64,000 nt of DNA from Guillardia theta CCMP2712 (GCF_000315625.1 NW_005434645.1:45477-109476); one strand, 5' to 3'. Shown: positions 51,201-60,945, counted from the stretch's first letter. Notes: generated by a model not told the origin, from the sequence alone. Program-made: numbers and translations.

Positions 51201-52683
51201 TGCTGGAGGGGGCGGGGCAGCTTGAGATATCCGAGCGTCAAAACCCTGTGAGGGTGAGGAACTTGCGTGTAGTCCCGAAGGTGCCCCGGGAGATAGACTT
51301 CTGCGAGTTCAACCTTTGCTTCAGCGTGAAGAGAGACAGGAAGCGAGAGAGGGCGAGCCGCGGCGAGGAGGAGGAGGGGGAGATCGCTCAGATTGTGAAG
51401 ACTTTCACCTACAGTAACGACATCTCCATAGTCGAGAAGATCGAGGAGTGTGAGAGAAGGGAGCAGCTGCTCAAGTCCCGGCAGGCGGCCCTCCACAAGA
51501 GCATCCAGGAGGGACAGGCGAGGATCGCTGCGCGACGTTCGAAGTTCGCAGAGGAGGAGGAGGAGGAGGACGTGGACGTGAGCGAGAAGCTGACGAGCTC
51601 GCGGCAGAAGCTCAAGGGCCTGCTGGAGGACTGGGCAGGGGCCGAGCGCTCGTCCGCCGCTTTGCCCTCCATGCACGACGTCAACGTGGAGGAGCTGGAG
51701 GGGGTGGTCGGGGTGGCCGCGGACCTGGGTGTCATCGACAGGCTGCAGGGGGTCAGCTCGGAGCAGGTGAGCAGGTGCCTGACTGCAGCATTCAAGGGCC
51801 TGCTGTGTGCTGTGCTGTTCCGGAGGGAGGAGGATCTCAACGCCTTCGACGCCCTCCCGCTGGAGGTGAAGGCGCGGGCCAAGGTCAGGAGGGTCTACTG
51901 CAGCACGAGGATGATGGACCCCCCACGGCCGAAGCGTCCTTCCTCCCCGGGCTTCGTCGCCTTCGCCTCCGACATGGTCCAGGTCAGCCCGAGCGTGAGG
52001 GAGGAGGACAGGGGCTGCGCTCGCGTGTTCCTCAACACCATCCTGGCAAACCTCCTGGTCTTCGAGAGCTACGAGCACGCTGTCAAGTACTCCACCGCCA
52101 TGATGCTCCAGAGGAAGCGAGCTGGGCGGCTGGTTGGCCTCGACCGCCCCAACGACGTCATCGACTCGGACGGAGGGAGAAACGTCAACTTCGGAGGGGA
52201 GGAGCTGAGAATTTGCTTCGGGATCCTCCCGCTCCGACCCTCCACCTTGGGGAAGGAGCTGCTGCGAGCCATCGACGAGGGTCGGGCGGTAGTCAAGAAG
52301 CTGGAGGAGGTGGTCGACAGCGATCGGGAAGACAAGCAGTCGATCGAGTGAGAATCGCTCTAGCAACTTCTCTTCCCTGCTTTCCTTCCTCCTCATTCTT
52401 CCACCTACACCGCTCCCTCCTTGCGCTGCTTCTAAGATCTCGTCCTCTCCTCTTCCTCCATCCTGTCCTCCTAATCCAACCCGTCTTGTACAACACCTTT
52501 CCCTAGTGTGTGATCTGCTCCTTGCTATTCTCTTTCCTCTTGTTCTTTCCCGTCCTCTCGTGACTTTCCGTCAGGGCTGACAGGCAGAAGCTGCGGGAGG
52601 TGGACGAGGAGCTGGAGCACAACAGGACAAGCCTCGCCCAGCTCAGCAGCCTCGGGAAGCCCAGGGACGAGGACGTTAGCTGA
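45266..52683 (+). CDS. SMCHD1: SMCHD1/GMI1-like protein: GHKL ATPase + transducer, long beta-rich linker, coiled coil and SMC hinge
   Basis: GHKL motifs AMCELIDNS, IFDNGMG and SNISRYGVGLKMA. SMCHD1-type transducer motifs FATLWMGRWLP, FKPQQNKQ and WLLECHKKFD. Hinge: GVVGVAADLGVI, PGFVAFASDMV, FLNTILANLLVFESYEHAVKY, RLVGLD..VIDSDG. Final exon ends TGA at 52681-52683. Confidence 0.85.
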
Positions 52684-52745
52684 AGTCCAAACTGCAATAG
52701 ACTTGTAAATATTGTTACAAAACACGCTGAGCCCCCGCAAACTGC

Positions 52746-55700
52746 TCAAGCCGAGGAGGCCCTCAGCTGCGGCTCCTTCGCAGGTCGCCTGGCGACCTTG
52801 TTGAGCTGCTTGCGGAAGGCCTCGGGGTCGAGGATGAGGCGCGAACCTGACCAGCTCCCTGTCAGCTTCCCCCCAGCTCGATCCTCTGCTCCTCCTCCCT
52901 TACCGTCCTTGGGCTCCTTGGCGAGCAGCTGCTGGGTGTTGGGGAGCTGCTGGGAGTAGACCTCGCAAGTGATGGCCCTGCGTTGTTCCCCTCCTGTCTT
53001 GACCACGGAGGCCCACACCTGCTGGAGGAGGCGCTTGTCCACGAGCCGAAGAGCCTCCACCTCCTCCTTGTAGCGATCGAAGTTGTACTGGCTGGTAGCG
53101 ATCTCGTCCCAGTGGCCCAGCACCTCGTCCGCGAGCTTCTTGTCCGTCTCCTGCTTCCTCTCGATCAGGCTCGTGACGAACTTTGACACCTGGTCCTCCC
53201 CCAGCTGCTCCAGCTGCTTGTCAAACGAGTCAACGAAGCTGAAGATCCTGCTGGCGATCTCGTTGGCGTCCACCACGCTGGACTGGGTGGTGAAGATGAG
53301 AAACCTTGAGCCGTCTCTCTTCGCTATCCCCGCGTACACGATATACCCCAGCTGCTGATTTGTTCTCAGCTCCGAGTAGAAGGGCTGCTGGACGATGCTA
53401 GCCAGAACCTGCAAGCCGAAGTAAGTGGACGGAGGAGGGAGGAGGGAGGGAGGATAGGGAGGAGAGGGAGGAGAGGGAGGAGTGGGAGGGAGGGAGGGAG
53501 GGAGGGAGGGAGGGAGGGATGGCAGGGTGGGAGGAGGAAGTTGTGCAGGCAGGAAGCAGGAAGTATCGAGAGAGGGAGGTGGGGAGGAGGGGGGGGGAGG
53601 AGGGCAGTAGAGCTCAGACGCCTTCACCTCCATGGCCATCTGCTCCTTGAGGTCGGGGTTGACGTTCTGGAACTGCACGACGACGGCCGAGTTGGGGTTG
53701 TCCGGGTTCAGCTCCTTCCTCCTCAGCAAGTTTCCTCGTCCCTCCCTCACGATCGGGAGCTCAAGGAGGCGAGGGAGGGACCTCTGCTCCTCTGGCACCT
53801 CCTTGAAGGAGAAAATCTCTCGCATCCTCCCTGCCACCGCACGCGCCTCCTCCTCCCTCACGTTCCCTTGGATCAGCAACTGGCTGTAACCCTGCTCCCA
53901 GAGTCTCTTCGTCCACTCCTTGAGCTCCTTGAGCGAGATGCCGTCAAGCTCTCGCTCGACGTCCGTTGGGAGGTAAGCCGGCAGCTCCAGGCAGAGGCGG
54001 GAGAACTCGGCGGCGTGCTGGTAGGGCTGCTGGGTGGTGAAGGCGCGAAGATCGCGGGAGATGAGGTCCTTGTAGCGTGCGAGCTTGTCCTCGCCCTCGG
54101 GCACGTGAGTCTTGATCCTTTCAGCAACCGAGAGGAGGAAGTCGGCGAGCTTGTCGTTGTAGCCCCCGAAGTTCAGCCGGACTCCACGCTGCGTGAAGTC
54201 GCAAGAGTACTGCAGCCCAGCCACCGCAGCATCGTAGCTAAACTCCGTAAGAGCGTCTGCCAGGGAAGCGGTGAGCAGCTTCGTGAGCGCTGAAGTTCGC
54301 GGGGTGGTCCCGGTGCCCAGCAGGGAGTCGAACTGGGAGATGAGCACGTAGGCGACGGCCTTGGGCTTGCCGTACCTCCTGTCCTGCTTGAAGAAGAGCC
54401 TCCAGGTGCTGTCGTCGACGAGGAGGGAAGGGGGTATGGCAGGCTTTGCCAGGTCCTCTACGATGGAACCCTTGATGTCGAAGTTGGAGGGGATGAACGG
54501 GTTTGGCTGCGGCACCGAGACGCCAGCAAGGGGAAGGCGACCCCAGCGGCTCTTGTCCGCCTCCTCGGTGTAGTAGCTCGTGCCATACCAGCGCTCGCGC
54601 ATCTTCGCGTCCTTGGCGAACTCCTGAAGGAGAAAGTGAGGCAAGGAAAAGGAAGGCAGGGAAGCAAAATGAAAGCACAGTGATTGAGGTTGATGAGGTT
54701 GGAAGGATGGCAGAATGAGCAGGAGAACGAGAAAGAGGAGGACAAGGACCTGGACGAGGAGGAAAGAGGAGGAGGAGGAGGAGGAGGAGGAGGAGGAGGG
54801 CGGGACGAGTACGAACCTTCGATGCGTACGTCAGCATGGCAGACTGCGGAGTAAGCGCAGAGAGCAGCTCCTGGGCCAGGTCGAGCTGGAGGTCACGGGC
54901 GAGGGCAGGGCCGGAGAGGTAGAGACGGGGGTCCTTGAAGGCCTGCATGGAGCTGACAACCCCGACGAACCGGTCCGGTTCCTCCGTCTCCTTGAAGCGC
55001 CAGAAGACCTGAGACAAATCCTCTACCTCCCTGAGGACGTAGGAGGGAATACCCTCCCTCCTGACCAGGTCGAGGTAGCTGAAGATGGAGGCTACAACCT
55101 CGTCCCTCCTCTTGAACCCCTCGATGGTCAGCTCCACGCTCACCACGAAGGACTGGAAGTCCGCCACGCTGTCGGCGACTCCTGCGAAGATGGAGGAGAC
55201 GAGGCCCTTCTCCGTCTTGAGGTAGGAGAGGAGCGAGTTCTTCCCCTCGTAGCCCAGGATCGAGCCGATCACTCGGTCGGGCTTCGACTTCATCCTCCGC
55301 TCCTTATCCTCCTTGGACTTGTAGGGGATCTGCCAGGTGAGCAGGAGCGACCTGCGGGAGGAGGAGGAGAGTGAGTTTGAGTTGATAACAGCACCTGCTA
55401 AGTAGTACAGAGACAGGCACAGAAACGGTATCAACAATATCAAGGCTGACAGCATTTTCTCTCCAACTCACTTTGTACCCCGCGGGTTCACAAAACTGTA
55501 CACAGCATGAAACAAACAGGACAAGGTAAGAATCACACTCCTCCTCCTCCTCCGCCTCCTCCTCCTCCTCTTCCTCTTCCTCCTCCTCCGCTCACCTCTC
55601 ATCCTGTATTGGGACAACATTGTAGACAACATTGCTCGCCTCCCTGCTATACGGCAGGATCTTCCCTGCCCAGCTCTCCTCCGGGGGCTTGACGTCCTTG

Positions 55701-56866
55701 TTGGGGATCGGAGAGAACAGCTCCTCCACCCACGACTGCAGCGTGTTCAGGTCCTCCCTCCCGATCACCGCCAGGCTCATCATGTTTGCCGAGTAGTACT
55801 TGTCGTAGAACTTGAGCAGCTCCTCCCTCACGTCCCTGCCCGACTTCTTCAGGTTCACCTCCAGCGTCTCCTTGTTTCCAGTGCCGAACTTGGCGACGGG
55901 ATGCGCCGGGTTTGCTCTGACCTTCTCGAGCTGGTTGAACCTCCAGCTGTCGGTCTGCAGATTCTTGGAGTTCTCGCTGTCCACCGCGTTGATCTCCCGC
56001 GACACTGCGGTCGCCGTGAACAGAGGGGACACGAAGAACTGGGAGAAGCGCTCGAGGGCAGGTCGGAAGCCGGCGCTGTTGAGGTTGAAGAAGTAGCACG
56101 TGTCCTCATCCGACGTGTACGCGTTGGAGGAGCCCGAGTAGGAAGACAGGAAGTTTTCGAGCTCGCCCTCCTGCGGAAACTTCTTGTTCCCGAGGAAAAG
56201 CATGTGCTCACAGAAATGCGCCAGCCCAGGCACGTAGTCAGGGTCCGAGAAGTGACCCACGTGCACGTTTAGCGCTGCTGCCGACGTCTCCACCTTCGGA
56301 TCGGACGCGATCAGCACTCGCAGGCCGTTAGCGAGCACCAGCGACCGATAGCTTCTCTTGTCCGCAGGAGACGTCTCTACCGTCCCCTCAGGGTCCACCA
56401 TGATCCTCCCAGGAGCCTTGTAGTCCTTGTCCAGGCCGAGGTCATACATCACCTCCTCCCTCACCACAGCATCCTCTGCATGCGCCGCCGGGGCAACGAG
56501 ACTCGAGAGGTCCTTGAGTACGACGCCAGAAGCAGCTGCCGCCGCACTTGCGCTGATGAAGCCTCGTCGGGACATCAGAAGCTTCACTGCCAGCGAGACT
56601 TGGGCGTCACCCCCCGTCTCTCTCCTCCCCTTGTCCTCCACCATTGCCAGCGGCACAGCCCTCCGAGCTCGCAGCCGAGGGCTCGCACACACAGCACGCC
56701 CACATGCCAGCAGCCTCCCCCTGCCGCTAACGGCTGAGCCCAGGTGGTTGGCCGTCTGGAAGCCGTGAGAAGCGTTGTTGGAAAAGAGCAGAACGAGGAG
56801 AAGATGCCACAGAGGGAGCAGGCTCCTCATGGCATGAACACTCCTCATCAAGCCAGGAGCTTCCAT
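52746..56866 (-). CDS. M16A metallopeptidase (insulysin/pitrilysin family) with SP + transit + twin-arginine presequence
   Basis: DKRSYRSLVLANGLRVLIASDP, GLAHFCEHMLFLG (HxxEH), NAYT, REINAVDSE, KFGTGN, YYSANMM and FYSELRTNQQLGYIV. Start at M56866 or M56830. Confidence 0.93.
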
Positions 56867-57292
56867 CGTGAAGAGTCTCTCCTGTGTATGAGAGTCAGCA
56901 ATGTAGCGAGAGGACGGCAGCAAATTCAGCATCAGAGAAGCTCATAGCGGGGAAAATATCTCTCTTCATGTTCATCCGCATCGTCTTCTTCTTGATTTCT
57001 ACAACAATTCATCATCTTGGCTCTTTCAAACTTCCACTAAGATGATTGATTTACTCCTCCATCTGTGAAAAGCTTGATACCGCATCATCCCTCCCTTCGA
57101 ATGGTCTCCTCACAAACTGTCCCTACTTCACCTCTCCTGCTCTGCTCCTCGTTTCAATCCCTCTTACCCTCTCGTAATTGTCGACGCCCAGCNNNNNNNN
57201 NNNNNNNNNNNNNNNNNNNNNNNNNNNNNNNNNNNNNNNNNNNNNNNNNNNNNNNNNNNNNNNNNNNNNNNNNNNNNNNNNNNNNNNNNNNN

Positions 57293-58300
57293 GTACGGTA
57301 GTACCCGGGCCCGGCGCGGTGGCGGCCGCGGCGTAGTTCAAACATTCAAACTCGAACCCTACCCCCTGTACCGACCCACTGACTACCCGTCCAATTCTGC
57401 ATAGGTTGTACGGTGGTCCTCTACACCTACACCCTGTTTTACTAATATTTTACCGGCCACCCTACCTACCCCGAGAGAAGAAATTCTTTCGAAACTGACA
57501 AATGTTCAATTTGTATAGAGTATTTTGAAATTTAGCCTATGCAAATTTCATATTTTACTATTCTTCTCATACTTTTTCAACTATACCACCCTCCCTTCTT
57601 AAAGGGCTTGCAAGGGTTTGCGCCTGTTTTCGGCAAGGAAGTGAGGGTAATGAATTGAACGGGGGTTACCTGGGGGGTGGGGGTGAGTGGATGTATGATA
57701 GGGGTAGGGTTGTTTCCAATGAGGGGAAGTCTTTAGATGTTGCAGCTCTGAGTTTGTTGAAATTTAAGGGTAGGGGTCCTCATTTGACCATTTGAAAGGT
57801 AGGGTGCTGAAAGCAAGGGGGTAGTGGCCTGTGTGGGTCCTGTTGTTGGGTCTGGTTTGAACGAAGAGACATAACCTGATACCTGTTGGAAGTGGGTAGG
57901 GTAGTCAGCTATCTAGAGGGGTCAGAGTTCAAATGAACCGGTACTGAATCAATTGATGTGGTAGGGGTGTATGTATTAGGTAGTGTCAACTTGGGATAAT
58001 TGGGGTCTAGAGGAAAATTTGAGGGTCATAGTATTGAGACATGTGTTCTGAAGGGTGGGTTAATGTCACAGGTACAATGGGTGGGGTAGTATTTAAGTAA
58101 AGGAGTATTGTTCCAGAAGCGTTGAGCCTGCAACAAGAGGGGTGGGGGTGAGCGGGTGGGGTAGCAACAGTTGGGGTAGGGTCATTTGAAACCTCGTAGT
58201 CTTGATCCTACTAGGGTGGTGGGACTTGTTGCTAGAACTGGTGGTAGGGGTAGTCTTGTGTTTTCGGAAATTGGGGTGGGGTTGGTGGTGAAGGTATAAG
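57293..58300. promoter_or_regulatory. Divergent intergenic region: remnant of a CCCGGG island (after gap 57193-57292), C-rich arm, then G-rich GGGTAGGG arm
   Basis: gtacccgggcccggcgcggtggcggccgc at 57301-57329; ctaccc motifs at 57357-57471; ggggtaggg motifs at 57701, 57767 and 58175. Confidence 0.45.
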
Positions 58301-59123: not shown

Positions 59124-60945
59124 TCAGTCGATGCGGACATTCCCGTCGTTGACGTTGCTCAGGATCTCGTTCAAGGCGTGCATGTCGCTTTCGTCGCCTC
59201 TCTGCGGAGAACGCCAGCCAGTCAGAACCTCCAAGTCAGTCTTGTCGGGAGGTCGACCTGAGCATTCTGACGGATCCGCAGATGTTCCATGAGATCAATT
59301 GGAGCGTGCCCCTCCTTGGCCTGAAAGGTCCAGCGCTAAGAATCCATTTGGCAGGGGGAAGAAGTAACAAACTGACCTGATTCGCAAATTCAACGTCATC
59401 TTCTCCATCGTCCAGCTCGTCACTGTCGGGCTCAAAGGCTGCAAACCCTCCCTTCGGATTCGCCTTGAACTCATTCTCCTCCTCATCCTCTTCATCGTCC
59501 TCCTTGGGAGCTGTTTGACAAAGTCACGGTTTGATCTCAAGAAGAGGTTACAAGGCAGACGTTTGATTTTGTCCAATCCTCCAACTTTTGCCATTTGCTC
59601 CCTCATCTACAGCAAATTCACACCAAGGAGCCCCGGGTCCAGCCTCCGCATGTCTTCACCTTCTTTAATCGTCGTTCGGTAGCTTTCGCTTCACGCTTCT
59701 GCTTCTCCTCAGCCCTGCTCGCAAGGTAAGCAGAGAATGTCGTCCCCTCCTCCTCTCCTACTTGGCTTCCAACATCGGTCTGTACACATTCGCATATTCC
59801 TCCCCTGCCCGCGCGATCTTGTCAAACAGATCCTGAGTTGCACATCAGCTCATGTCTACACGGAGGACCGTCAGGACCTCGACTCCCTCTCCTGTGACTG
59901 CCGACATGCAGACAGTCGTGATGTTCCGATAGAATTCCTGCCCCATGTGAGCGTGGAGTAAGGGCGGCCTTAATCAACTACCTCTAGCACGAGCCCCATA
60001 GAGGCTGACAGAGTCCCAGCATACGCCTTTTCGTCTTGAACAGCCTCCTGAAACTTCTCGTAGTCTGTCATCCAATCGCTACACACGCAGCAAGTTGAAA
60101 ATCCATGTCAGGCTGTGCAGATGAACACGGGCAAAGAGGTCACATGGCGAAGTCGGCCGAGGTCACATCGGTCTTGTTGAAGACGAGGATGAAGGGAAGC
60201 TTGAAGCAAGGTTCAGACAAGACAACTGCGAGGATCAACTTGCAACCTTGAACTTGTACATGATGGAGCATGCGTAGAGCATGTTCGACATAAAGGTCAC
60301 CGGGGACGTTGTCCTCGGAGTGTCCACCACGTAGATCAATGCAGTGGGAACAGAGAAAGCGAACATGTCAGAGATGATGGTACCAGAAGCAGACCAAGTG
60401 AAGATCTCGATCTGTCCAGGAGTATCCACAAAGATATGCTGGAGGCTGTCGGCCTTCTGCTCGATCAACCCCATGACTTGGTCAAACTTGGTTGCAAAGA
60501 GGTTCAGCGACGTCAAGATCCCCCCGTTCGGTCCCAGCTCGTACTCCTTCATCACTTGCTTGTAATTCACTGTGTCGCGGATGTCAATGTTGCAACCGTA
60601 AGGAACCGAGCTGACTGCAGGGTCCAGGTTGATGATGTACGATGGCAGCTGCTGGTTGTGTATGTGAACAGCGATCCTTTGCATCAGCGTCGTTTTGCCG
60701 CTGCCTGCCATCCCAAGCACCAGGCATGCGACTGGGCTCTTGCGGACGGGGCCGAGCGAGAAACGAGGCACTTGCTTCGAGAGATTGACGCTGGGCTCCG
60801 CTGCCTCCCGCTGCTCACTCGAGGATGACGACGATGTTGTCTTCTTCTTTGCTGCTGCAGGGCTGCTGCCGCTGCTGTCTGCATGGATCGATTGTTCTGA
60901 TCCATCTGTATCACTCTTCGCACTAGATAGGAATCCTTTCTTCAT
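59124..60945 (-). CDS. GPN1: GPN-loop GTPase 1 (XAB1/Npa3), RNA polymerase II biogenesis
   Basis: [66 protein letters not shown] and [12 protein letters not shown]. Acidic tail; last exon ...[10 protein letters not shown]. Confidence 0.96.

What the first reader, a model, noticed from the sequence alone, without database searches (positions are those of the whole stretch)
56477..56866. Pitrilysin/IDE-type peptidase with a tripartite presequence pointing to the thylakoid lumen
Seen: signal peptide MRSLLPLWHLLLVLLFSNNASHG followed by +1 Phe, an Arg/Ala/Ser-rich transit peptide, then MSRRGFISASAAAAASGVV...VAPAAHA|EDA. That last part is a twin-arginine motif, a hydrophobic stretch and an A-x-A cleavage site just before the M16A catalytic body. 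Established: SP+Phe routes proteins into complex red plastids, and RR + AxA is the Tat thylakoid-lumen signal. Known plastid M16 enzymes (PreP, SPP) are stromal, while bacterial pitrilysin is periplasmic, the topological equivalent of the lumen. Inference: a lumenal peptide-degrading M16A enzyme, which I do not know as a described component. Cryptophytes uniquely keep their phycobiliprotein antenna in the lumen, so it could clear cleaved peptides or turn over antenna subunits.
Basis: partly seen in the sequence, partly recalled or inferred. Interest (0 to 1): 0.82.

Follow-up and report, generated by a model that had tools for sequence, protein, structure and literature searches.

The report
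Thylakoid-lumen-targeted insulin-degrading-type peptidase
A cryptophyte alga encodes a complete insulin-degrading-enzyme-type zinc peptidase whose three-part leader should carry it into the thylakoid lumen; diatoms, brown algae and other red-plastid algae share that leader, and I found no report of a lumenal peptide-clearing enzyme of this kind.

Summary
Window 56477-56866 encodes the leader of a five-exon gene (52746-56866, 1135 aa). The spliced model is 100% identical to an existing JGI protein model, P0275.

The leader has three parts:
- an ER signal peptide ending ASHG|F;
- a 63-aa Arg/Ala-rich transit peptide;
- S-R-R-G-F-I, a mildly hydrophobic stretch, and AHA|ED.

The body is a complete four-domain M16A enzyme with HFCEH and the downstream Glu ligand. 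It is much closer to eukaryotic IDE than to E. coli pitrilysin.

The same leader occurs in Hanusia, Hemiselmis, several diatoms, Ectocarpus, Nannochloropsis, a chrysophyte and many metagenomic sequences. These form one clade (SH-aLRT 100) whose sister group includes the red-algal IDEs, which have no RR lumen-targeting domain where the N-terminus can be judged.

Lumenal phycoerythrin alpha-1 subunits of the same genome use the same leader grammar, and a nuclear TatA-like gene is present.

So the enzyme is most likely lumenal and Tat-imported, but it is not cryptophyte-specific, so antenna turnover cannot be its founding role. Localisation and substrates remain untested.

The parts
55596..56866 (-). 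Exon 1: leader plus catalytic M16 domain. The JGI model P0275 starts at the Met at 56830; an upstream in-frame Met lies at 56866. The donor GT is at 55595-55594, phase 2.
56762..56830 (-). ER signal peptide, M13-G35. Predicted cleavage is ASHG|F. The h-region has a Kyte-Doolittle score up to 2.28.
   Evidence: Conserved in Hanusia (ASYG|F) and Hemiselmis (VQC|F, VHG|F). Same pattern as the phycoerythrin alpha subunits (AAA|F).
56759..56761 (-). Phe at +1 of the transit peptide, the stroma-import marker in cryptophyte and other red complex plastids.
   Evidence: PMC5784005 (the AXA-F/Y motif)
56573..56761 (-). Transit-peptide-like stretch, aa 36-98: 63 aa with 11 R+K, 10 A and 4 D+E. It ends KLLM just before SRR, which fits a Leu/Met near the stromal cleavage site.
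   Evidence: PMC5784005 (Leu or Met at -2)
56477..56572 (-). Twin-arginine lumen-targeting domain, aa 99-130: S-R-R-G-F-I, an Ala-rich h-region (KD up to 1.75), a Lys in the c-region, and AHA before the predicted mature N-terminus.
   Evidence: conserved in orthologs
56474..56476 (-). Predicted first residue (E131) of the mature enzyme. The mature protein is 1005 aa, 114 kDa, pI 5.5.
   Evidence: prediction only
56204..56218 (-). HFCEH inverted zinc-binding and catalytic motif, aa 217-221.
55973..55975 (-). Glu298 in NAVDSE, aligned with the third zinc ligand of IDE (the E in ..NAVDSEHEKN..).
   Evidence: alignment; invariant
54817..55351 (-). Exon 2 (M16_C domain). The acceptor AG is at 55353-55352 and the donor GT at 54816-54815.
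53628..54623 (-). Exon 3 (M16_M domain). The acceptor AG is at 54625-54624 and the donor GT at 53627-53626.
52904..53408 (-). Exon 4. The preceding intron, 53409-53627 (219 nt), is in frame with no stop, and when read mechanically it gives a spurious Pro-rich insert.
52746..52846 (-). Exon 5 with the stop codon, following a 57-nt in-frame intron (52847-52903). There is no C-terminal PTS1; the protein ends ..RASSA.
   Evidence: P0275 is 100% identical over 1123 aa.

Best explanation
This is a nuclear gene of a Guillardia-type cryptophyte for an active, full-length IDE-type (M16A) zinc peptidase. Its tripartite leader should deliver it to the thylakoid lumen.

Inferred route:
1. Co-translational ER entry and signal-peptide removal at ASHG|F.
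2. Transit-peptide-dependent passage of the periplastid and envelope membranes into the stroma, with F at +1.
3. Stromal processing near KLLM|S.
4. Zinc loading and folding in the stroma.
5. Export of the folded 114-kDa enzyme through the thylakoid Tat translocase, using the SRRGFI signal.
6. Cleavage by thylakoidal processing peptidase after AHA.

In the lumen it would act as IDE-type enzymes do, enclosing unstructured peptides of up to a few dozen residues in its clamshell chamber and degrading them without ATP. It would therefore be the peptide-clearing step downstream of the lumenal endoproteases and processing peptidases: fragments made by Deg-type proteases, the pre-D1 C-terminal extension, released targeting peptides, and in cryptophytes possibly also the 8-10 kDa phycoerythrin alpha subunits.

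Shown: gene structure, family, catalytic motifs, leader anatomy, its conservation, and a single phylogenetic origin.
Inferred: localisation, cleavage sites, the Tat route, and substrates.
For: Family and integrity:
- Pfam finds M16, M16_C, M16_M and PqqF-like_C_4 across the whole protein.
- The best solved relatives are rat and human IDE (E 1e-86, 294 bits), against E. coli pitrilysin at 1e-43.
- HFCEH and the Glu ligand are invariant.

Gene model:
- Splice sites were read directly and guided by tblastn of P0122.
- The spliced product is 100% identical to the independent JGI model P0275.

Organism:
- The assembly is 87.1 Mb in 669 contigs.
- It holds 23 phycoerythrin-alpha matches.
- The nearest relative of the protein is from Hanusia phi, at 84% identity.

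Leader conservation:
- SP+F, a transit peptide and RR + h-region + AxA/VFA occur in Hanusia, in two Hemiselmis sequences and in P0122.
- They also occur in Cyclotella, Thalassiosira, Detonula, Odontella, Nitzschia, Fragilaria, Ectocarpus (TRREFF), Nannochloropsis and Chlorochromonas.
- Many unnamed marine sequences carry them too.

Phylogeny:
- In the full-length tree (76 sequences, 967 columns, leaders excluded) the leader-bearing proteins form one clade with SH-aLRT 100.
- Its sister group contains the Porphyridium and Porphyra IDEs.
- The catalytic-domain tree of 230 sequences gives the same clade at SH-aLRT 90.

Same-genome control: phycoerythrin alpha-1 precursors read AAA|FSPSMSLDV-SRRQVVQTGAAAAAVAPF..AQA|A, while the alpha-2 type lacks the RR domain. 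This matches PMC5784005.

Tat machinery: there is a nuclear exon with the TatA signature ..ALIFGPKNLAGLGKDLGK...

Signal quality: the LTD h-region is less hydrophobic than the ER signal peptide (KD 1.75 against 2.28), and the c-region carries a Lys.
Against: - There is no experimental localisation, and no N-terminal or lumen proteomics hit was found. The T. pseudonana N-terminome paper and its supplements do not mention the enzyme.
- No dedicated signal predictors (SignalP, TatP, ASAFind) were available.
Expression in this species therefore rests only on the fact that presumed RNA contig sets hold 0.62-0.76 of the sampled words, close to the exonic fraction.
- A 114-kDa single chain would be an unusually large thylakoid Tat passenger (my own knowledge).
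- A chrysophyte-like subclade keeps the hydrophobic + AxA module but has KK, RK or no basic pair instead of RR (P0296, P0338, P0014, P0125). So Tat dependence is not universal in the clade.
- TatC was not found in the nuclear assembly. It is expected to be plastid-encoded, which could not be checked here.
Confidence: 0.68

Rival explanations
1. The twin-arginine domain inserts through Tat but is not cleaved, as in the Rieske protein. The peptidase would then be tethered to the thylakoid membrane by its N-terminal helix, with the catalytic body still in the lumen.
For: The h-region with its flank is long (about 28 residues). The small-x-small sites vary between orthologs (AHA, VFA, AEA, ANA). 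No cleavage data exist.
Against: Every cryptophyte and hapto-like ortholog keeps a canonical small-x-small site followed by acidic residues (AHA|ED, AHA|EE, VFA|ED, AEA|ES). These are the same sites used by the cleaved phycoerythrin alpha-1 precursors (PMC5784005). The h-region is Ala/Ser/Gly-rich and only weakly hydrophobic (KD 1.75), which is poor for a stable anchor.
Confidence: 0.1
2. The protein stops in the stroma, or in another plastid sub-compartment. The RR-hydrophobic stretch would be only a conserved part of a long transit peptide or a stromal-face membrane-association segment. The enzyme would then be a second stromal peptide-degrading M16, working alongside PreP.
For: Localisation is untested. 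Known plastid M16 enzymes (SPP, PreP) are stromal (PMC9860172). Arg-rich transit peptides can produce RR by chance; the transit peptide here has another RR, at ..RARRA...
Against: The RR is always followed by an uncharged h-region and a small-x-small site at a fixed distance from HxxEH. This holds across lineages whose transit peptides are otherwise unalignable. The same module separates the lumenal alpha-1 phycoerythrin precursors from the alpha-2 type in this genome. IDE relatives outside the clade mostly lack it: 2 of 14 judgeable sequences have it.
Confidence: 0.1
3. The enzyme reaches the lumen unfolded through the thylakoid Sec pathway. The conserved RR would be only the positively charged n-region of a Sec-type signal.
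For: Some clade members have KK, RK or no twin arginine but keep the h-region and AxA. The passenger is very large for Tat.
Against: RR is retained in 33 of 43 clade members in the full-length tree, and most of the rest are truncated models. The S/T-R-R-x-F/L context appears repeatedly (SRRGF, SRRFF, TRREFF, TRRRL). The h-region is only weakly hydrophobic and the c-region carries a Lys. These are Tat hallmarks (PMC5539426, PMC7317946 for the general rules).
Confidence: 0.07
4. This is the first reader's functional idea taken as the primary role: a cryptophyte-specific enzyme devoted to turnover of the lumenal phycobiliprotein antenna.
For: Phycoerythrin alpha subunits are 8-10 kDa and lumenal (PMC5784005), which is within the size range IDE-type chambers accept (my own knowledge of IDE).
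Against: The leader-bearing clade is present in diatoms, brown algae, eustigmatophytes and chrysophytes, which have no lumenal phycobiliproteins. The recruitment to the lumen therefore cannot be explained by the cryptophyte antenna. At most, antenna turnover is an added substrate class.
Confidence: 0.08

Closest known systems
Insulin-degrading enzyme / insulysin (MEROPS M16A), eukaryotic
   Same: It has the same four-domain, roughly 1000-aa clamshell architecture, with HxxEH and the downstream Glu ligand. Identity is high in domain 1 (PDB E 1e-86). The clade nests inside eukaryotic IDEs.
   Different: IDE is cytosolic or peroxisomal (partly mitochondrial or secreted) and ends in a PTS1. This protein has a 130-aa SP+TP+RR leader and no PTS1. 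It also has a roughly 35-aa mature N-terminal extension with a YDLG..APGK motif, shared only with its closest relatives.
Pitrilysin / protease III (PtrA) of E. coli, periplasmic M16A
   Same: Same family, and a topologically equivalent compartment (periplasm and lumen).
   Different: It is a much more distant relative (1e-43, 151 bits against 294). The algal enzyme is not its descendant. Pitrilysin is known as a Sec substrate (my own knowledge), whereas here the signal is twin-arginine.
Presequence peptidase PreP (M16C) and stromal processing peptidase SPP (M16B) of plastids
   Same: Both are M16 zinc peptidases of plastids, and PreP is the organellar peptide-clearing 'peptidasome' (PMC9860172). 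An SPP-like gene with its own signal peptide exists in this genome on contig C27.
   Different: They belong to different M16 subfamilies and are stromal, with no lumen-targeting domain.
M16B-type insulinase-family peptidases in the cyanobacterial lumen/periplasm proteome (homologs of sll0915 and slr1331)
   Same: These are M16 peptidases enriched by lumenal PsbU-APEX2 labelling in Synechococcus 7002 (PMC7880944). A lumenal M16 activity therefore has a cyanobacterial precedent.
   Different: They are short two-domain M16B proteins of bacterial origin. The algal enzyme is a single-chain M16A of eukaryotic IDE ancestry, so it would be a replacement or reinvention, not an inheritance.
Cryptophyte phycoerythrin alpha-1 precursors (tripartite leader, Tat)
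   Same: The leader grammar is identical in the same genome: SP ending small-x-small|F, then a transit peptide, then SRR + Ala-rich h-region + AxA (PMC5784005).
   Different: The passenger is a 114-kDa enzyme rather than an 8-10 kDa antenna subunit, and the transit peptide is much longer (63 aa against about 9).

Membership tests
Peptidase family M16, subfamily A (IDE/pitrilysin type) | Inverted zinc motif HxxEH in the first domain | tested here: met
   HFCEH at aa 217-221 (window 56204-56218, minus strand). It is invariant in the 11-sequence alignment.
Peptidase family M16, subfamily A (IDE/pitrilysin type) | Third zinc ligand: a Glu about 77 residues downstream, in the NAVDSE-type motif | tested here: met
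   E298 in REINAVDSENSKN aligns with REVNAVDSEHEKN of IDE. It is invariant.
Peptidase family M16, subfamily A (IDE/pitrilysin type) | A single chain of about 1000 aa with four homologous alpha/beta domains | tested here: met
   Pfam finds M16 (171-308), M16_C (335-516), M16_M (529-810) and PqqF-like_C_4 (923-1022) on P0275.
Peptidase family M16, subfamily A (IDE/pitrilysin type) | Peptidase activity and size-selective chamber | not testable with these tools
   This needs the recombinant enzyme. No structure was predicted here.
Twin-arginine (Tat) thylakoid lumen-targeting signal | S/T-R-R-x-F-L-K-type motif at the start of the signal | tested here: met
   The motif reads S-R-R-G-F-I-S (aa 99-105). 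Orthologs read SRRGF, SRRFF, SRRHF, SRRSA, TRREFF and TRRRL.
Twin-arginine (Tat) thylakoid lumen-targeting signal | A moderately hydrophobic h-region, a basic residue in the c-region, and an AxA-type cleavage site | tested here: met
   The h-region reaches a KD maximum of 1.75, against 2.28 for the ER signal peptide. A Lys lies 14 residues before AHA|E.
Twin-arginine (Tat) thylakoid lumen-targeting signal | Conservation of the module in orthologs | tested here: met
   33 of 43 members of the SH-aLRT-100 clade carry it. The exceptions are mostly truncated models or a KK/RK subclade.
Twin-arginine (Tat) thylakoid lumen-targeting signal | Tat translocase present in the organism | tested here: inconclusive
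   A TatA-like nuclear exon is found (29.9 bits against a 21-bit cut-off; the FGPKNL motif). TatC is absent from the nuclear assembly. It is expected in the plastid genome, which is not in G000.
Twin-arginine (Tat) thylakoid lumen-targeting signal | RR- and pH-gradient-dependent translocation and cleavage | not testable with these tools
   This needs import assays or in vivo fusions.
Bipartite (SP + F-type transit peptide) leader of red complex plastids | An ER signal peptide with a small-x-small site followed by Phe at +1, then a positively charged transit peptide poor in acidic residues | tested here: met
   ASHG|F, followed by a 63-aa stretch with 11 R+K and 4 D+E. The same junction occurs in Hanusia, Hemiselmis, diatoms and the phycoerythrin alpha precursors.

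The most novel reading that the evidence does not exclude
An IDE whose nearest leaderless relatives include the red-algal IDEs acquired a twin-arginine lumen-targeting domain once. It has since been kept in cryptophytes, ochrophytes and probably haptophytes and dinoflagellates as the oligopeptidase ('peptidasome') of the thylakoid lumen. No plant or green-algal counterpart of that function is listed. It would also be the largest single-chain passenger known for a thylakoid Tat translocase. A chrysophyte-like subclade may have later switched it to a non-RR (Sec-type) signal.
Probability: 0.45. Interest if true: 0.72.

Novelty: new variant of a known kind. Interest (0 to 1): 0.62.

Why it matters
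Lumenal proteolysis is known to involve the Deg1/5/8 endoproteases, CtpA and the processing peptidase. What removes the peptides they release inside the lumen is not described: PreP, OOP and SPP are all stromal (PMC9860172).

A conserved, Tat-targeted IDE-type enzyme in red-plastid algae would supply that missing step for a very large share of marine primary producers. Testing needs only a handful of standard experiments in Phaeodactylum, Thalassiosira or Nannochloropsis.

It also gives a clean evolutionary case of a host-type (non-cyanobacterial) enzyme being retargeted across up to five membranes. And it offers an extreme test passenger, 114 kDa with bound zinc, for thylakoid Tat capacity.

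Tried and rejected
I have no 5'-end or splice-junction reads. Local work used the pieces 52500-53445 and 53494-57000, which lie beside them.

2. Literature turned up nothing on this enzyme. I searched:
- insulinase + thylakoid lumen;
- insulin-degrading enzyme + thylakoid + diatom;
- M16 + thylakoid lumen + peptidase;
- twin-arginine + Phaeodactylum + lumen;
- Guillardia theta + insulinase;
- insulinase + diatom + plastid.
No paper describes a lumenal M16A. The T. pseudonana N-terminome supplements have no hit. The G. theta antenna proteome paper does not mention the enzyme.

3. Pitrilysin or cyanobacterial descent is rejected. IDE scores twice the bits of E. coli PtrA, and the clade's sister group includes the red-algal IDEs.

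4. An alternative start at the Met before SRR, which would give a bacterial-style Tat precursor, is rejected. That Met is Leu in Hanusia, Hemiselmis and P0122.

5. A Pro-rich insert and a Gly-rich C-terminal insert appear in the mechanical ORF. Both are rejected as in-frame introns, by homology and by identity with P0275.

6. Taxon names for the closest non-cryptophyte relatives (P0002, P0005, P0121, P0276-P0284) could not be obtained, because the cluster look-ups returned metagenomic sources only. 'Haptophyte-like' is therefore a guess.

7. The other M16 genes of this genome (contigs C86, C40, C72, C27) were inspected and none has an RR domain.

Full report
**What is in the sequence**

The finding lies on the minus strand. 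I number residues from the in-frame Met at 56866.
- The hydrophobic signal peptide is M13-G35, and it ends ASHG|F36.
- A 63-residue stretch follows that is rich in Arg and Ala and poor in acidic residues.
- Next comes S99-R-R-G-F-I, then an Ala/Ser/Gly-rich h-region, a Lys in the c-region, and A128-H-A130 followed by E-D-A.
- The finding's limits, 56477 and 56866, are exactly the last codon of this third module and the upstream Met.
- The zinc motif HFCEH is at residues 217-221.

**Gene model**

Exon 1 ends at 55596 (donor GTGAGC). Four further exons follow: 55351-54817, 54623-53628, 53408-52904 and 52846-52746. All are bounded by GT..AG. I placed them by reading the junctions and by tblastn of the full-length ortholog P0122.

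Two introns (219 and 57 nt) are in frame and free of stops. This is why the mechanical ORF list shows a spurious Pro-rich insert.

The spliced product (1135 aa from M1, 1123 aa from M13) is 100% identical over 1123 residues to P0275. P0275 is a JGI protein model returned by the word search, so it gives an independent confirmation. The gene itself was therefore already modelled. What is new is the reading of its leader.

**Family**

Pfam finds all four M16A domains. The best solved relatives are rat and human insulin-degrading enzyme (E 1e-86, 294 bits over residues 185-445). E. coli pitrilysin scores 1e-43. HxxEH and the downstream Glu ligand (E298) are invariant. There is no C-terminal PTS1. 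The predicted mature enzyme is 1005 aa, 114 kDa, pI 5.5.

**Organism**

The assembly has 87.1 Mb in 669 contigs and holds 23 matches to the cryptophyte phycoerythrin alpha family. The nearest protein is from Hanusia phi, at 84% identity over the whole of exon 1 including the leader. This fits a Guillardia theta-type cryptophyte.

The word search and the exhaustive profile search recovered many relatives with N-termini:
- Cryptophytes (Hanusia, two Hemiselmis sequences, and P0122) all show signal peptide|F, a transit peptide, L-S-R-R, an uncharged Ala-rich stretch, and AHA, AEA or ANA followed by acidic residues.
- A closely related unnamed marine group (P0002, P0003, P0005, P0008, P0121, P0277, P0284) has A|F, then SRR(H)FFV..VFA|ED.
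- Named diatoms have TRRRLVLSLL-type domains after an ASAFAP-type junction. These are Cyclotella, Thalassiosira, Detonula, Odontella, Nitzschia and Fragilaria.
- Ectocarpus has TRREFF. Nannochloropsis and the chrysophyte Chlorochromonas also carry RR domains.

I then built trees from which the leaders were excluded.
- The tree on the catalytic region (230 sequences) places the leader-bearing proteins in one clade of 34 tips, SH-aLRT 90.
- The tree on full-length sequences (76 sequences, 967 columns) gives one clade of 43 tips with SH-aLRT 100. Of these, 33 carry the RR module by a simple rule.
- Most of the others are truncated models.
- A chrysophyte-like subclade keeps the hydrophobic + AxA part but has KK, RK or no basic pair.

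The sister group contains the IDEs of the red algae Porphyridium and Porphyra. Porphyridium's N-terminal extension has no such domain, and the Porphyra N-terminus is too short to judge.

Among proteins with at least 125 residues upstream of HxxEH, 20 of 26 inside the clade carry the module, against 2 of 14 outside. This count is descriptive only, because the sequences are related.

The module therefore arose once and has been maintained across lineages whose transit peptides are otherwise unalignable.

**Controls in the same genome**

The alpha-1-type phycoerythrin precursors are accepted lumenal Tat passengers in cryptophytes (PMC5784005). They read ..AAA|FSPSMSLDV-SRRQVVQTGAAAAAVAPF..AQA|A. 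The alpha-2 type has only the signal and transit peptides. The peptidase leader uses the same grammar.

A nuclear exon with the TatA signature is present. TatC is not in the nuclear assembly, as expected if it is plastid-encoded, but I could not check that.

The other M16 genes of the genome lack an RR domain. They are a TM-anchored M16A on C86, a signal-peptide M16A without Phe on C40, an SPP-like gene on C27 and an M16B-like gene on C72.

**Interpretation**

The most likely reading is a soluble lumenal IDE-type peptidase, imported by signal peptide, then transit peptide, then the Tat signal, and released by cleavage after AHA.

Even if the signal were not cleaved, the positive-inside orientation would still put the catalytic body in the lumen.

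IDE-type enzymes degrade short unstructured peptides inside a closed chamber without ATP. The most economical function is therefore clearance of the peptides produced in the lumen by endoproteases and processing peptidases.

A plant chloroplast proteostasis review lists only Deg1/5/8, CtpA and TPP on the lumenal side, and places all peptide-degrading peptidases (PreP, OOP, SPP) in the stroma (PMC9860172). Cyanobacterial lumen proteomics does list M16B insulinase-type peptidases (PMC7880944). These are unrelated in subfamily and origin to the enzyme here.

1. The enzyme is a eukaryotic IDE whose nearest leaderless relatives include the red-algal IDEs. It does not descend from periplasmic pitrilysin, so the periplasm-lumen parallel is convergent.
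2. The clade is widespread in algae without lumenal phycobiliproteins. The cryptophyte antenna cannot explain why the enzyme is in the lumen, although alpha subunits may be additional substrates.
3. The Met before SRR is not conserved.

**Limits**

- No localisation, cleavage or activity data exist.
- Dedicated signal predictors were not available.
- Expression in this species is only suggested. Presumed RNA contig sets hold 0.62-0.76 of the sampled words, close to the exonic fraction of the stretch, while probable DNA runs hold up to 0.88.
- The Hanusia protein, which comes from a transcript, covers the entire leader.
- Six targeted full-text searches found no description of a lumenal M16A. 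The library does not cover all journals.

**Verdict**

The feature is real. The lumen-targeting reading is well supported by comparative evidence. It is a new variant (a new compartment and import route) of a well-known enzyme family, of moderate to high interest, and directly testable.

Noticed in passing
window 53409-53627 and 52847-52903 (minus strand): Two introns of this gene (219 nt and 57 nt) are multiples of three and have no in-frame stop. Six-frame ORF reading therefore fuses exons and invents a Pro-rich and a Gly-rich insert. This is a likely source of false low-complexity 'domains' elsewhere in this genome.
   Followed up: yes
P0296, P0338, P0014, P0125 (relatives): A chrysophyte-like subclade of the lumen-type IDE keeps the hydrophobic + AxA module, but RR is replaced by KK, RK or nothing. 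This may be a switch from Tat to Sec import of the same passenger.
   Followed up: partly
P0096 and P0245 (partial metagenomic proteins): Two IDE fragments outside the main clade, grouping with Ala/Pro/Arg-rich green-alga-like sequences, also show a transit-peptide-like stretch followed by SRR + a hydrophobic region. This could be an independent gain or a misplacement of short sequences. Their taxon is unknown.
   Followed up: partly
aa 139-158 of the protein (window about 56393-56452, minus strand): A motif Y-D-L-G-x-x-K-D-[YF]-x-x-A-P-G-[KR] lies between the predicted mature N-terminus and the IDE core. It is conserved in cryptophytes and the closest marine relatives but absent from canonical IDE. 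Its function is unknown.
   Followed up: no
G000 contigs C86 (L013), C40 (L016), C27 (L015), C72 (L014): There are four other M16 genes: an N-terminally TM-anchored M16A interrupted by an assembly gap, an M16A with a signal peptide but no Phe at +1 (secretory or periplastid?), an SPP-like enzyme with a signal peptide, and a PqqL-like M16B with a C-terminal hydrophobic tail.
   Followed up: partly
L027 (G000:C97:46030-46130): A TatA/Hcf106-like exon (..VIGVIAALIFGPKNLAGLGKDLGK..) is present. Its own leader was not examined.
   Followed up: partly
window 57194-57293: A 100-base run of N (assembly gap) lies about 330 bases upstream of the gene's first Met. The promoter and 5' UTR region is therefore incomplete, and GC drops from about 0.58 to about 0.41 there.
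   Followed up: no
window 60235-60945 (minus strand): An ORF with a GPN-loop GTPase signature (GMAGSGKTT ... GPNGG) is a neighbouring housekeeping gene, unrelated to the finding.
   Followed up: no
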